A DNA stretch of 64,000 bases from assembly GCF_006345805.1 (NCBI RefSeq), contig NC_042997.1, forward strand, positions 166,656,001-166,720,000, in the 5' to 3' direction. This stretch comes from Octopus sinensis (lineage: Eukaryota). The translations under genes and the position numbers were made by a program. The notes under the pieces are model-generated. The model saw only the letters and a program-made list of their open reading frames with translations. It was not told the origin of the DNA and searched no databases. How positions within the stretch are numbered: position 1 is the stretch's first letter; each line of letters begins with the position of its first letter. Shown piece after piece: positions 32,307 to 52,862 of the stretch.

Positions 32307-32702
32307 TTAAAAATTATTGTTCGGATCAAATAATGGGTTGGGAGATTTGTCACGTTTACTGAACTGGACTCCAAATGCTGTGATAAAAATATTTGCAACA
32401 GTAATGAAAAGAATAAACCCAATTATGATATTGTTGAGTATGTTGGCCCGCCTGACATGTCTCTCTGTGTGGTCTTTTAAAGATCCAAGAATCAGCAGCA
32501 ATATTCCAGTGATTACTTGAAGACTGATGGAAATAATGACAATAGCAACAAGGGCATGGTAATAGTCGTGAGCTTCTCCAACATCTAAAATTGCCTTTAG
32601 TTGAGATGCATTTGACATAAGAAGGGCGACATCAAGCAGTCCCTGAGCCATCGTCTTCTTTGTAGCATATCGGTAGTAGTTAAATGATATTGGTGCACTC
32701 TC
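32307..32702 (-). CDS. NINJ: Ninjurin family protein A, core/terminal coding exon
   Basis: ESAPISFNYYRYATKKTMAQGLLDVALLMSNASQLKAIL...SISLQVITGILL...NILNN...VANIFITAFGVQ matches the ninjurin signature (KKS.AE.MLDIALLMANASQLK...NIFITAFG). Acceptor TTTTGCAG|GAG at 32703/32702; stop at 32307; AATAAA at 32228-32233. Confidence 0.95.
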   Translation of the reverse strand, partial: ESAPISFNYYRYATKKTMAQGLLDVALLMSNASQLKAILDVGEAHDYYHALVAIVIISISLQVITGILLLILGSLKDHTERHVRRANILNNIIIGFILFITVANIFITAFGVQFSKRDKSPNPLFDPNNNF

Positions 32703-32883
32703 CTGCAAAATAGAAGCATGACATGATTTTTAATGCAGTTAACTTTTGAATTAAATGAGAAAGTATTCATAAAATTACACCACACACACACAGGTTAAAC
32801 ATTTATTCAAACATTGCAATGCTGTTAGACCAATATTTATTGAAGGACCCATTCATGTACCTGTACACATATATATATATATG

Positions 32884-32940
32884 TAGAGAGAGAGAGAGAG
32901 AGAGAGAGAGAGAGAGAGAGAGGGAGAGAGAGAGAGAGAG
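32884..32940. repeat. (GA)n microsatellite in the ninjurin A intron
   Basis: Directly visible. Confidence 0.95.
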
Positions 32941-33369
32941 CAATAAGAAAATGGAGTGGATCAATAGGTGGTTCATCAACTTTTAGGCATTATGCCAACT
33001 TATTTATTTATTTACTAAAATGACAATTACAAGAATATACATACATGTATAACATATTATACTTTACATATAAAATATATTAATATATAAAGATAGCACT
33101 AATTATTAAAATATAACATACAGGAATATAAACTGGGAAAATAGAAGAGCCATTTTAGCTATTTTAAAAAACACAAAAACTTGAATTCACTTTTCATTTA
33201 TTTTTTAAGGTGCCAAAACTTTCAATGTATAGCTGCATCCTCATCATTGGCACAGTTCAGTATCTGCGTTGTAGGCTTATGTCAACTCCAGCTATCAAAT
33301 GAAACCATAGTGAAGATTGTCTTGCTGCCTTCTTATAATAACCAGAAAGTCCAATCAGTTCTCTTCTGT

Positions 33370-33800
33370 CTGTTGGTTATGGAGAGAAGACAGGAGAGGT
33401 ATGCAGTAATATATATCTGGAAGATCCTGGAAGGAATTGTGCCAAATTTTGGCATTGAAAGCTACACCAATACCAGAACGGGACGACACTGCATAGTGCC
33501 AAAGATCCCAGCAATGCCATCATACTTCAGGACCAGTTACTGCAGCAGCCTGGGTTTCAAGGGCCCACAGCTTTTTAATATTCTCCCAAAGAGTCTGAGG
33601 AACTTGCACAAAGTAGATGTAGGGGTTTTAAAATCAAAGCTGGACCTCTTCCTGTCGAGAGTCCCAGATGAACCTACCTCACGGCAAGAGGTGCAAATGA
33701 GGGTAGCTATATCAAACTCTATTCTTCACCAAGTGCCACATATTAGACGAGGTTCTTCGCAATAACAGTGTAGCAAAATGGTGGTGCATCAGCATGGCCG
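33370..33800 (+). mobile_element. 3' end of a CR1/Jockey-group LINE ORF2
   Basis: ERRQERYAVIYIWKILEGIVPN...GPQLFNILPKSLRN...KSKLDLFLSRVPDEP...SNSILHQ. Confidence 0.85.
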
Positions 33801-34254
33801 CAGCTCTGAGCTGAATCTTGAGAGAAAAAAAATGTGTATTGAAGAGACAAAAATTACTGAAATTAAACACTTTCCACTTTGATCAGGCCCTCATTGATAT
33901 TTTTTGTCATCAATTTCCATTTGGAAAGGAAGGTGAGGGTGGAGTGAGAGGTGCTCTTCAATAAATTTGTTAAAAGGTAACTATGATGAGAATGGCAAGA
34001 GTGGCTGAGTCTACTATTTTCAGAGTACTATCATTAGTGGTCAGGGTGATCCTGGACCTGTGAGATTACTTGGCTGCCCCTATTCTCTATCAGGAGGAGC
34101 ATCTCACCATTGCTTATTTAGATACTGTATACTTTTTGTCTCATTCAATTAGTTCTTTTTCTTATTTGGTTCTTATGTAAACCCCAACACTTAATGTAAT
34201 GTTTTTAAAATGTTCTCCTCTTTGATGCAGTTGTGATAAATAAAATAAGTTATT

Positions 34255-50460: not shown

Positions 50461-51604
50461 ATTTCATAGGTCAGCTGATATGATTCAAAATACATTCTCT
50501 ATGTATTCATAACCTGATAAAATAATGGTTTCAAATTTTGGAAAATGGCCAGCAATTTCGGGGGAGGGTTAAGTCAATTACATTGACACTTAGTGTTCAA
50601 CTGGTACTTACTCTATTGGCCACCCCACTCCTAACGGATGAAAGGCAAAGTCGACCTCAGCAGAATTTGCACTCAGAATGTAAAGACAGATGAAATACTA
50701 TAGGGATATTGCCTAGCATGCTAATGATTTTGCCAGCTTGCCACCTTATAATTCTTTAAAAATAATACAACTAGTAAAATTTATACGCATCAGAATTACT
50801 AACCAATAATATGAGGTAACCCACGCAGCACATGTAACTGTTGTTTTGAGGGCACATGGAAGTTCATTCCGTTAAAAAAAAAACAACATAAATATGTCCT
50901 TTTCTTTTTGCTCCTTTTATTTATTTACTTATTTATATTTTTGTATAGATTCCTCAGGTAAAGAGGCACTTGTTTTTGTGACATACGTTGTCCATGCATT
51001 TTCATTTGCCTGGAACTGATGATTTTCTCTTGGTTATAATGTTGGCAAAAATAAGTTGATGTTCTTGTTGGTGCTTTTATAATCATTCACCAATTTTTGT
51101 GCTTGTCAAATCAGGATTGTCTGTGTTTATAACTTTTTTACTTAATTGTCATTACTTGTGTTTTGTTCTTTTAGATATATTTTCTAGATTTCAAAAATTT
51201 AAGGTGGGACGTATTTGTTACTAATACCTTAAAAGATAGTACCTCCTCCCACTACCTCAGAAGTGGCTGTATTGAACCTCTTGTATACAAAGCAAAATGA
51301 ATACTTGCAAGAGAGTGAGTACAAAAGAAATATTAATTTTCTTTTCCACCTTGCTGAGGTGAGGTGGATTTTTAAATATTCTGAAATCCTTCGTGAGTGT
51401 TTGCGGGATGGAAACAAGCATTTTCATTAAAAACTCATGGAAGAAAATAATTTCTGACCAGAGTTCTGTGAGACTTGGCTGTCCAAGGAAACCACCATCA
51501 ACAACACTGCCAGTAACAACAATAACAATTGTACAACAACACTGCCAATAGTAATAACAACATAAGTTGAAGGTCAGAAATTTGGGGTTTAGGATTAGTC
51601 AATT

Positions 51605-51895
51605 AAAACCATTCGAGCGTGGTCGTTGTTAGTACCACCTGACTGGCTCCTGTGCCAGTGACACGTAAAATGCACTGTACAAGTGTGGTTGATACCAATA
51701 CTAAATAACTGGCCCTCATGCCAGTGGCATGTAAAAAGCACCCACTACACTCTTGGAGTGGTTGGCGTTAGGAAGGGCATCTAGTTGTGGAAACCTTGCC
51801 AGATCAGATTGGAGCCTAGTACAGCCTTCTGGCTTGCAAGTCCTCAGTCCATGCCAGCATGGAAAACGGATGTTAAACGACAATGGTGATGATGA
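51605..51895 (+). mobile_element. RTE-tailed subrepeat element inserted into a SINE A copy
   Basis: SINE A sequence stops at GTCAATTAAAAC (~51608) and resumes at ~51900 (AATTAAAACAATCCAGTAC). Confidence 0.75.
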
Positions 51896-52149
51896 TGAAT
51901 TAAAACAATCCAGTACTCAGCTAGTTCTTTATTTTTTAAACCCTTGAAGGGATGAAAGACAAAGTTGATTTCAGAAAGATTTGAACTCAAAACGAAAAGA
52001 GCCAGAATAAATAATGCAAGGCACTTTTCCAAGGCTCTAACAATATTGCTAAACCACTGCCTTTAACAAAAACAATAATTATAATAATAATAATAGAATC
52101 AACTAGAACAAACAAGACCGAATGCGCTGAGGATTAAAAAAACAATAAT

Positions 52150-52400
52150 AATAATCTGTTGTGTCTGGGGAGAGTCATTTTCTTTTTGTGACTTATAATG
52201 TAACACACTCACCAGTAAAATTTCCACTTATTTCTTATTTTTATTTTCCTAGAATTTTTGTTGCATCTTGCAACCTTTTCAATAGTCTTGACTATTGAAT
52301 AGTCCGGTGAATGTGTTACATTACCCTGTTACATTTACCGGTGAGTGTGTTACATTATAAAGCACAAAAAGAAAATGACTCTCCCCAGACACAACAGAAT
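52150..52400. mobile_element. Small inverted-repeat element with a decayed hammerhead-like core; related copy at about 26490-26610
   Basis: CTGTTGTGTCTGGGGAGAGTCATTTTCTTTTTGTG..TATAATGTAACACACTCACC (52156-52213) is inverted at ~52338-52398. Minus strand CTA-TTGAAAA-GGTTGCAAGATGCAAC-AAAAATTC-TAG at ~52249-52285. Confidence 0.65.
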
Positions 52401-52505
52401 ATGCTTCAACACACGAAATCATATAAAGAATCTTGCAAACCAAATCCCAAAACGAAAAATAATAATTAAATTCATATGACTACAATTTAAATTTTCCTTC
52501 AATAT

Positions 52506-52862
52506 TTAATTTTTATTCTGCACGGCAAAAGCTGTTATAAAGATATTGCTTATAGTTATAATCAGTATTAAAATAACTATGATGTTGTTTAAAATGTTCT
52601 GCCTTTTTAATTGTTCTTGCGTACTGCCTCTGGACACGGCGAGTATCCATAACATGTGTGCCACAACTACTTGAAGGACAAGTGACACGGAGATGAGAGT
52701 GATGAGCAGTATAAAGTAAGAGCTGCCTTGACCGCTGTCCAGTACTGACTTCAACTGCGACATATTAGACATGAGTAAGGAGATGTCCAACAATCCCTGT
52801 GCCATTGTCTTCTTCGTCAAATACCGATTGTAGTTAAAGTGCTTACTTGCTGGAGGCATTTC
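52506..52862 (-). CDS. NINJ: Ninjurin family protein B, core/terminal coding exon
   Basis: EMPPASKHFNYNRYLTKKTMAQGLLDISLLMSNMSQLKSVL...SLVLQVVVAHML...NILNN...ISNIFITAFAVQ. Acceptor TTTGTATCTCTTCTAAAG|GAA ATG at 52863/52862; stop at 52506. Confidence 0.95.
   Translation of the reverse strand, partial: EMPPASKHFNYNRYLTKKTMAQGLLDISLLMSNMSQLKSVLDSGQGSSYFILLITLISVSLVLQVVVAHMLWILAVSRGSTQEQLKRQNILNNIIVILILIITISNIFITAFAVQNKN

What the first reader, a model, noticed from the sequence alone, without database searches (positions are those of the whole stretch)
32307..52862. Two ninjurin core exons 20 kb apart with identical phase-0 entry: tandem paralogs or alternative last exons of one gene
Seen: both exons are on the minus strand, start right after an AG acceptor with a Glu codon in phase 0, encode the complete amphipathic-helix plus two-TM core, and end in their own stop. 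Ninjurin A has no Met upstream of the conserved helix, so it needs an upstream coding exon, yet I found no convincing one between 32.7 and 52.5 kb. Established: NINJ1 polymerises to execute plasma-membrane rupture in lytic cell death, while NINJ2 does not. Inference: either a cephalopod ninjurin cluster, or one promoter choosing between two different pore-forming cores by alternative terminal-exon splicing, which would be an unusual switch for a lytic effector.
Basis: partly seen in the sequence, partly recalled or inferred. Interest (0 to 1): 0.72.

Follow-up and report, generated by a model that had tools for sequence, protein, structure and literature searches.

The report
Octopus ninjurin gene, two alternative last exons
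The two ninjurin exons are real and are best read as alternative last exons of one very long Octopus sinensis gene, a layout that public gene models for this species already show, so it is tidy but not new.

Summary
Observation confirmed. Window 32307-32702(-) (core A) and 52506-52862(-) (core B) each follow a pyrimidine tract plus AG and open with a phase-0 Glu codon. Each encodes a complete Ninjurin domain (Pfam PF04923, E 2e-33 and 2e-29), ends in its own stop and has poly(A) signals nearby.

The window is Octopus sinensis. RefSeq already models one gene, "ninjurin-2", with seven isoforms: four alternative first coding exons (3-23 aa) combined with the two terminal cores. Three of the first exons are joined to both cores. 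None of the four is in the window. The ATG of exon 1a lies about 99 kb upstream of B and 119 kb from A, so exon B sits inside the intron of A transcripts.

O. bimaculoides models show the same pattern. A chiton has the same layout within 9 kb, checked here on its DNA. Arthropod ninjurin models swap the C-terminal half of the core (from within the first membrane helix onward) through alternative terminal exons.

So this is an alternative-last-exon gene, not two tandem genes. I did not see junction reads, and an extra internal start site for B is not excluded. B appears only in Octopus, evolves faster than A, and is under purifying selection (dN/dS 0.28). Which core, if either, is lytic cannot be told. 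No paper describing this was found.

The parts
32307..32702 (-). Terminal core exon A (coding part): 131 codons plus TAA, complete Ninjurin domain, the conserved copy.
   Evidence: It is 100% identical to the core of O. sinensis isoforms X1, X2, X4 and X5. It is 96% identical to O. bimaculoides and 88% to Argonauta.
32703..32725 (-). Splice acceptor of exon A: pyrimidine-rich tract plus CAG, phase 0.
   Evidence: Read directly from the sequence (gtcatgcttctattttgcag|GAG).
32228..32233 (-). AATAAA poly(A) signal, 73 nt after the stop of A.
32186..32221 (-). T/GT-rich stretch just 3' of the A poly(A) signal, a candidate downstream element. It is weakly similar to 52433-52467 after exon B.
   Evidence: 36 nt, 81% identity, E 0.005 in a small comparison. 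The role is inferred.
52506..52862 (-). Terminal core exon B (coding part): 118 codons plus TAA, complete Ninjurin domain, the divergent copy. ATG is its second codon.
   Evidence: It is 100% identical to the core of O. sinensis isoforms X3, X6 and X7. dN/dS is 0.28 against a third Octopus species.
52863..52885 (-). Splice acceptor of exon B: pyrimidine-rich tract plus AAG, phase 0.
   Evidence: Read directly (atattttgtatctcttctaaag|GAA). It is conserved in the third Octopus species.
52512..52517 (-). AATAAA inside the last codons of B. ATTAAA overlaps the stop at 52505-52510. These are candidate proximal poly(A) signals.
   Evidence: Read. Whether they are used is unknown.
52240..52245 (-). 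AATAAA 260 nt after the stop of B. A further one lies at 51928-51933, 572 nt after the stop.
32726..52505 (-). Segment that is transcribed and removed when the distal core A is used. It is repeat-rich and holds no ninjurin-like or annotated first exon.
52886..64000 (-). Downstream end of the roughly 99-kb intron between the first coding exons (beyond the window) and exon B.
   Evidence: gene ranges of 99,122 and 119,321 bp with a shared start. (no first exon here).

Best explanation
The window holds the 3' part of one very long (at least 119 kb) Octopus sinensis ninjurin gene on the minus strand.

Proposed mechanism:
1. Transcription starts at one of up to four alternative first coding exons. 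These encode 3-23 residues, end in phase 0, and lie beyond the right end of the window.
2. The single donor of the chosen first exon is spliced to one of two acceptors. The proximal one is at 52862 (core B) and the distal one is at 32702 (core A).
3. Each target is a self-contained terminal exon. It holds the two amphipathic helices and the two-helix membrane hairpin of a ninjurin, its own stop codon and its own poly(A) signal.
4. The choice is therefore an alternative-last-exon decision. Either the transcript is spliced and cleaved at B, or the polymerase reads 20 kb further and splices to A, removing B as intron.
5. Each mRNA carries one core only. The two proteins share just the short N-terminal peptide and differ through the whole functional domain (54% identity).

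In effect two paralogs are driven by one shared set of promoters, and their ratio is set by splicing and polyadenylation.

Shown here: the exon anatomy, family membership, the absence of first exons from the window, the shared start coordinate of the two products in the assembly record, and purifying selection on B.

Inferred: that the modelled junctions are used in vivo, that competition between splicing and polyadenylation sets the ratio, and any functional difference between A and B.
For: Exon anatomy:
- Both exons have a phase-0 AG acceptor, a full Pfam Ninjurin match and their own stop.
- Poly(A) signals lie 73 nt after the A stop, and 260 and 572 nt after the B stop. For B there is also an AATAAA in its last codons (read).

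Shared first exons:
- O. sinensis isoforms X1-X7 decompose exactly into four N-terminal peptides times two cores. Three of the peptides are used with both cores.
- O. bimaculoides models show the same pattern: X1-X3 carry core A, and X4 and X5 carry core B with two of the same first exons.
- The assembly record gives a 141-aa and a 154-aa product with one start. The ends are 99,122 and 119,321 bp away, and the difference of 20,199 equals 52506 minus 32307.
- No first exon is found in the window, and there is no third core.

Same logic elsewhere:
- In the chiton locus L008 the first exon (10001-10048) has a GTAAGT donor in phase 0. Two single-exon cores at 16031-16387 (acceptor cag|GAA, Glu, phase 0) and 18558-18941 each have their own stop.
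- Firefly models combine 2 first exons with 4 terminal exons after a shared 58-aa block. A copepod shows the same pattern.

B is not a dead copy. It is intact in three Octopus species, with dN/dS 0.28, and its coding sequence is about 93% identical versus 83% for the flanking intron.
Against: - All splicing evidence is second-hand. It comes from predicted RefSeq protein models, and I could not inspect RNA-seq junction reads or long reads.
- The O. sinensis models may have been helped by O. bimaculoides proteins, so the two species are not fully independent.
- B has an ATG as its second codon and would be translatable from a transcript that starts in the intron just upstream.
- Two contigs from a third Octopus species carry exon B contiguous with 585 nt of upstream intron. 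If they derive from RNA, they would fit an internal start or unspliced RNA.
- Isoform X5 (MKQ + core A) has no B counterpart. Its 9-nt exon is too short for a negative search to be fully safe.
Confidence: 0.8

Rival explanations
1. Two separate tandem paralogous genes, each with its own promoter. B is a small gene nested in, or lying just upstream of, A, and the RefSeq isoforms that join the distant first exons to B are modelling artefacts.
For: - B begins E-M and its ORF from ATG 52859 gives a complete 117-aa ninjurin. A gene caller made exactly that protein on contigs of a third species.
- A and B are old, distinct lineages. They are 54% identical, and B falls outside a 100%-supported clade of A-type cephalopod sequences.
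Against: - The same three first exons are attached to both cores in O. sinensis, and two of them in O. bimaculoides.
- Both products share one start coordinate in the assembly record.
- B starts precisely at a good acceptor in the same phase as A, with an in-frame stop 10 codons upstream. This is the anatomy of an internal or terminal exon, not a first exon.
- A has no first exon of its own anywhere in the 31 kb upstream that the window covers.
- The chiton has the same arrangement with only 2.2 kb between cores and a single annotated first exon.
Confidence: 0.08
2. A mixed case. A and B share the distal first exons as modelled, and B is also transcribed from an internal start site in the intron just upstream and translated from its own ATG at 52859. 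This would give a 117-aa protein without the N-terminal peptide.
For: - The ATG at codon 2 is conserved in three Octopus species.
- Contigs L001 and L002 hold exon B together with 585 nt of upstream sequence.
Against: - There is no positive evidence of a start site.
- The contigs may simply be genomic reads or pre-mRNA.
- The upstream 585 nt evolves like an intron: 83% identity against about 93% for the exon.
- No RefSeq isoform starts there.
Confidence: 0.12

Closest known systems
RefSeq gene 'ninjurin-2' of Octopus sinensis, isoforms X1-X7 (XP_036362488, XP_029640414, XP_036362492, XP_036362496, XP_036362499, XP_029640420, XP_036362514), and the O. bimaculoides counterpart (XP_014773313, XP_014773314, XP_052828007, XP_052828015, XP_052828022)
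   Same: This is the same locus. Both cores in the window are 100% identical to the O. sinensis models, and the 20,199-bp spacing is reproduced.
   Different: Nothing differs. The models are predictions, and I found no paper that discusses them.
Ninjurin gene of the chiton Liolophura sinensis (isoforms X2 and X3, locus L008)
   Same: One first coding exon with a phase-0 donor is followed by two complete single-exon ninjurin cores in tandem, each with a phase-0 acceptor and its own stop. The proximal core also opens with Glu.
   Different: - The chiton gene is compact: 9 kb in all, with the cores 2.2 kb apart.
- The conserved core is proximal in the chiton but distal in octopus.
- The two chiton cores group with each other only weakly (bootstrap 39%) and not with A or B. 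The duplications may therefore be independent.
Arthropod ninjurin genes with alternative terminal exons (Photinus pyralis X2-X5, Tigriopus californicus, Condylostylus)
   Same: Alternative first exons combine with alternative terminal exons, each carrying its own stop. One terminal-exon type (EILNH...FGLDPAV) recurs in beetle and fly, and a similar one occurs in the copepod.
   Different: - Only the C-terminal half is swapped: the end of the first membrane helix, the loop and the second membrane helix, after a shared ...SIVLQ.
- The amphipathic helices are constant.
- This was seen in protein models only. The loci could not be fetched.
Vertebrate NINJ1 and NINJ2 (solved filaments 8CQR, 8UIP, 8SZA, 8SZB)
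   Same: - Same family and same helix layout. A and B align over NINJ1 residues 35-150 and 36-143 (E 1e-24 and 1e-21).
- The equivalents of K45, D53, Q91, I134 and A138, whose mutation impairs filament formation and lysis (PMC10307626), are kept in both cores.
   Different: - In vertebrates the two forms are separate genes, not terminal exons of one gene.
- The vertebrate NINJ1/NINJ2 sequences group together, apart from all protostome sequences, in the tree, which was rooted on them.
- Position A47 is Met in both octopus cores. NINJ2 has Val there, and A47L was inactive in cells.
- G93 is Ile in A and Val in B.
- B also has G95A, G124I and G140A.
- No lytic activity is known for either core.
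Classical alternative-last-exon genes such as calcitonin/CGRP (from general knowledge, not tested here)
   Same: A proximal terminal exon with its own poly(A) site competes with splicing to a distal terminal exon, and the two products share an N-terminus.
   Different: In octopus the shared part is only 3-23 residues, and the whole functional domain is exchanged for a paralogous one.

Membership tests
Ninjurin family (Pfam PF04923) | Match to the family profile above the curated threshold | tested here: met
   A scores 114.6 bits and B 101.7 bits against a gathering score of 26. Model positions 3-102 and 1-102 of 102 are covered.
Ninjurin family (Pfam PF04923) | Four-helix layout of the solved NINJ1/NINJ2 structures: two amphipathic helices followed by a two-helix membrane hairpin | tested here: met
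   Both cores align to the NINJ1 and NINJ2 chains over the whole structured region. Each has two hydrophobic segments: A residues 46-77 and 85-115, B residues 45-79 and 87-116. No structure was predicted.
Ninjurin family (Pfam PF04923) | Residues shown by mutagenesis to be needed for NINJ1 filament formation and lysis (K45, D53, I84, Q91, G95, T123, I134, A138; PMC10307626) | tested here: inconclusive
   From the alignments and the residue list:
- K45, D53, Q91, I134 and A138 are kept in both cores.
- I84 is Val in A and kept in B.
- G95 is kept in A and is Ala in B.
- T123 is Ile in A and Val in B.
The same changes occur in other invertebrate ninjurins (alignment), so they do not decide function.
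Ninjurin family (Pfam PF04923) | Polymerisation and plasma-membrane rupture activity | not testable with these tools
   This needs expression in NINJ1-deficient cells and a lysis assay.
Alternative-last-exon gene (one gene, two terminal exons) | Both terminal exons are joined to the same upstream exon(s) | tested here: met
   Three first-exon peptides occur with both cores in O. sinensis models and two in O. bimaculoides. The two products share a start coordinate. The basis is predicted models, not reads.
Alternative-last-exon gene (one gene, two terminal exons) | Each terminal exon has its own acceptor, stop codon and poly(A) signal, and the acceptor phases are compatible | tested here: met
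   Both acceptors are phase 0.
Alternative-last-exon gene (one gene, two terminal exons) | No separate first exon or promoter for the distal exon between the two terminal exons | tested here: met
   None of the four annotated first coding exons lies in the window. A non-coding first exon cannot be excluded from sequence alone.
Alternative-last-exon gene (one gene, two terminal exons) | Direct transcript evidence: junction reads, full-length cDNA, 3' ends | not testable with these tools
   The contigs found are either unspliced at exon B (L001, L002) or come from other cephalopods with a single form (L003-L007).
Tandem paralogous genes | Each copy has its own first exon and start site | tested here: not met
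   - A has no Met before the conserved helix, and no first exon within 31 kb upstream.
- B begins at an acceptor with an in-frame stop upstream.
- An additional internal start for B remains untested.

The most novel reading that the evidence does not exclude
Protostome ninjurin genes may form an old, recurrent 'shared promoters, exchangeable membrane core' system. In it, the choice of terminal exon would decide whether a cell makes a rupture-competent ninjurin or a non-lytic, perhaps filament-capping, one. Splicing and polyadenylation factors, rather than transcription, would then set a cell's readiness for membrane rupture. Octopus core B would be the modulatory form. It is Octopus-restricted and faster evolving, and it has changes at glycine positions of the membrane hairpin.
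Probability: 0.12. Interest if true: 0.7.

Novelty: already known. Interest (0 to 1): 0.33.

Why it matters
For this window, the result settles an annotation question. The two ninjurin exons belong to one gene whose first exons lie far outside the window, as public gene models already state.

More broadly, ninjurins are studied as executors of membrane rupture (NINJ1) with a non-lytic paralog (NINJ2). In octopus, a chiton and arthropods, gene models produce comparable pairs or sets from one gene by alternative terminal exons, and I found no paper that discusses this. If the isoforms differ in polymerisation or lysis, these genes offer natural chimeras for mapping what makes a ninjurin lytic. 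They would also be an example of cell-death competence set by the choice of RNA processing. That is a hypothesis, not a result.

Tried and rejected
- **First exons in the window.** I searched for the four annotated first coding exons by exact and 6-mer peptide matching, by permissive tblastn and by DNA patterns for Met-Lys-Gln. Nothing turned up on the minus strand upstream of 32702.
- **A third ninjurin exon.** tblastn with octopus, chiton and other cephalopod cores found only A and B.
- **Spliced transcripts in public assemblies.**
  - Isoform X6 is not on record as a contig product.
  - Contigs with B (L001, L002) still carry the upstream intron.
  - Contigs L003-L007, from other cephalopod-like species, show a single A-type form and say nothing about alternative exons.
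- **Firefly and copepod loci.** I tried to fetch them to check the arthropod pattern on DNA, but four look-ups found no record. That part rests on protein models only.
- **Equating A with NINJ1 and B with NINJ2.** I rejected this. The score differences are small, and the vertebrate pair groups together, apart from all protostome sequences, in the tree rooted on them.
- **Recent duplication.** I rejected this too. Nucleotide similarity between the two exon regions is limited to 75 nt of the helix-coding part.
- **Literature.** Searches for ninjurin with alternative splicing, isoforms, cephalopod or mutually exclusive exons found nothing on this architecture. The one related note reports differential isoform use of a butterfly ninjurin-A (PMC12518556).
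Full report
**1. The observation**

On the minus strand, exon A runs from 32702 down to a TAA at 32307-32309. Exon B runs from 52862 down to a TAA at 52506-52508.

Each is preceded by a pyrimidine-rich tract and AG (gcttctattttgcag|GAG and tgtatctcttctaaag|GAA). 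Each opens with a complete Glu codon, so both are entered in phase 0. In-frame stops lie 8 codons (A) and 10 codons (B) upstream, so neither reading frame can extend further 5'.

Both translations match Pfam Ninjurin (PF04923) across the whole model, at 114.6 and 101.7 bits against a threshold of 26. They are 54% identical to each other. Each has two long hydrophobic segments.

Each also aligns to the solved human NINJ1 and NINJ2 chains over the entire structured region. No further ninjurin-like exon exists in the 64 kb. One addition: the second codon of B is ATG.

**2. Where the window comes from and what is already annotated**

The two cores are 100% identical to RefSeq proteins of Octopus sinensis. 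The RefSeq gene "ninjurin-2" has isoforms X1-X7. Taken apart, these consist of four N-terminal peptides combined with the two cores.

| First coding exon | With core A | With core B |
|---|---|---|
| MRHIEMNSRHSHENSTSYGLSID | X1 | X3 |
| MANKPDDAKPA | X2 | X6 |
| MGSLNNACQ | X4 | X7 |
| MKQ | X5 | none |

O. bimaculoides has the same pattern. Isoforms X1-X3 carry core A. X4 and X5 carry core B with two of the same first exons.

In the O. sinensis assembly record, a 141-aa product and a 154-aa product begin at the same coordinate and end 99,122 and 119,321 bp away. The difference, 20,199 bp, equals the distance between the two stops in the window (52506 minus 32307). That first coding exon therefore lies near window coordinate 151,600, about 88 kb beyond the right end.

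**3. No first exon in the window**

The following searches all failed to place any of the four first exons on the minus strand upstream of 32702:
- exact and 6-mer peptide searches;
- permissive tblastn;
- DNA patterns for the 3-residue exon.

Exon B therefore lies inside the intron that A transcripts remove.

**4. How it most likely works**

A first exon with a phase-0 donor can be joined to the proximal acceptor (B) or the distal acceptor (A). Each target carries its own stop and poly(A) signals:
- For A, AATAAA lies 73 nt after the stop and is followed by a T/GT-rich stretch.
- For B, AATAAA lies in the last codons, with further copies 260 and 572 nt after the stop.

This is the anatomy of alternative last exons. 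Splicing and cleavage at B compete with read-through and splicing to A, so each mRNA carries one core.

The anatomy and the shared start coordinate are shown. Use of the junctions in vivo rests on predicted models, and the competition mechanism is inferred. I put this reading at 0.8.

**5. Is core B alive?**

A third Octopus species (contig L001) has exon B intact, with the same acceptor. Against it, dS is 0.158 and dN 0.045, giving dN/dS 0.28. The 585 nt of upstream intron are 83% identical, against about 93% for the exon.

B is 92% identical between O. sinensis and O. bimaculoides, against 96% for A. An exhaustive HMMER scan of 1.84 billion representative proteins finds only one B-type cluster, from Octopus. 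Every other hit is at most 50% identical.

In a neighbour-joining tree, the results were:
- A groups with Argonauta and two other cephalopod-like transcripts at 100% bootstrap, and B falls outside that group.
- The combined cephalopod clade has 75% support.

Either the duplication predates those lineages, or B has evolved fast. Nucleotide similarity between the two exon regions is confined to 75 nt, so the duplication is old.

**6. The same design elsewhere**

*Chiton.* In Liolophura sinensis, two RefSeq isoforms share MTCCEAEAMSSGTGVM and then have different cores. I checked the following on its DNA (locus L008):
- The first exon, at 10001-10048, ends ...ATG|GTAAGT.
- Core 1, at 16031-16387, starts cag|GAA (Glu, phase 0).
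- Core 2, at 18558-18941, starts cag|CCA.
- Each core has its own stop.

This is the octopus layout compressed into 9 kb. The conserved Glu-first, phase-0 entry points to an old intron position and to exon duplication.

*Arthropods.* In firefly models, two first exons combine with four terminal exons after a shared 58-residue block ending ...SIVLQ. A copepod behaves the same way. One terminal-exon type recurs in beetle and fly, with a similar one in the copepod. There, only the end of the first membrane helix, the loop and the second membrane helix are exchanged. I could not fetch those loci, so this rests on protein models.

**7. Function of A versus B**

NINJ1 polymerises into filaments that rupture membranes. 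Mutations K45Q, D53A, I84F, Q91A, G95L, T123L, I134F and A138L impair this. Degen et al. discuss A47, L57, Q63 and G93 as differences from NINJ2 (PMC10307626).

I read the octopus residues off the alignments.

| NINJ1 position | Core A | Core B |
|---|---|---|
| K45, D53, L57, Q63, Q91, I134, A138 | kept | kept |
| A47 | Met | Met |
| G93 | Ile | Val |
| G95 | kept | Ala |
| G124 | kept | Ile |
| G140 | kept | Ala |

B also has His and Trp in the first membrane helix. Several of these changes occur in other invertebrate ninjurins (alignment), so they do not tell which core is lytic.

A scores slightly higher with NINJ1 and B with NINJ2, but the margins are small. The vertebrate pair also groups together, apart from all protostome sequences, in the tree rooted on them. 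No NINJ1/NINJ2 assignment is justified.

**8. Rivals**

- *Two independent tandem genes.* This is unlikely (0.08), given the shared first exons, the shared start coordinate, the acceptor anatomy of B and the lack of any first exon for A.
- *An additional internal start site for B, using its own ATG.* This is compatible with everything seen and is untested (0.12). Contigs L001 and L002, which hold exon B with its upstream intron, could be genomic DNA, pre-mRNA or such a transcript.

**9. Novelty and score**

The one-gene, two-terminal-exon reading is already in RefSeq for this species, and O. bimaculoides isoform models with the same accessions carry 'PREDICTED' names from an earlier annotation release. 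The finding is therefore already known at the database level.

I found no paper that describes it. The nearest is a note on differential isoform use of a butterfly ninjurin-A. The recurrence in a chiton and in arthropods is a modest comparative point worth a specialist's glance.

The interest score is 0.33.

Noticed in passing
window 30756-32108 (-): The O. sinensis assembly annotation carries a 103-aa gene model with no Pfam hit. It starts 199 bp after the stop of ninjurin core A and overlaps the likely 3' end of the A transcript. It is probably spurious.
   Followed up: no
window 15660-16295 (-): A 211-aa ORF starting at ATG, acidic and Ser/Thr-rich, with no Pfam match. It may be a coding exon of the next gene downstream on the same strand.
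   Followed up: partly
window 12317-12784 (-) and 18412-19299 (-): Retroelement remnants. The first has an RNase H-like domain of reverse transcriptases (E 3e-22). The second has a weak reverse-transcriptase match below the Pfam threshold.
   Followed up: partly
window 40958-43230: A GC-rich block (0.45-0.48 against about 0.35 elsewhere) made of tandem units of 55-67 nt. Two similar ORFs lie at 41578-41988 and 42738-43223. It sits in the A-B interval, so it could be mistaken for a promoter island.
   Followed up: no
window 17342-18107; 49071-49881; 62517-62974: Long simple repeats. The first gives 'MYVCMYVC' ORFs on both strands. The others are trinucleotide arrays (CTA, TAA, TGG) and a (GA)n array plus about 84 copies of AGAT.
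   Followed up: no
window 32186-32221 and 52433-52467 (-): Both core exons are followed by a similar T/GT-rich stretch containing GGATTTGGTTTG (81% identity over 36 nt, E 0.005 in a 2.4 kb by 2.4 kb comparison). For A it lies just 3' of AATAAA, like a cleavage downstream element. It may be chance in T-rich DNA.
   Followed up: no
L001 and L002 (contigs from runs SRR11869391 and SRR11869384), 1-1005: A third Octopus species has exon B contiguous with 585 nt of upstream intron sequence. I could not tell whether the runs are DNA or RNA. If RNA, this would point to unspliced or internally initiated B transcripts.
   Followed up: partly
L008 (chiton Liolophura sinensis) 1-8391 and 25774-28941: The chiton ninjurin gene lies between a protein tyrosine kinase gene and synapsin. 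This is a possible synteny anchor for comparing molluscan ninjurin loci.
   Followed up: no
window about 29091 and 30091 (-): Two copies of a short element containing CAATAAACAC...CAACGCCCGGTCTGGGAATCGAAACCGCGA, which looks like a tRNA-derived SINE, lie downstream of exon A (context lines).
   Followed up: no
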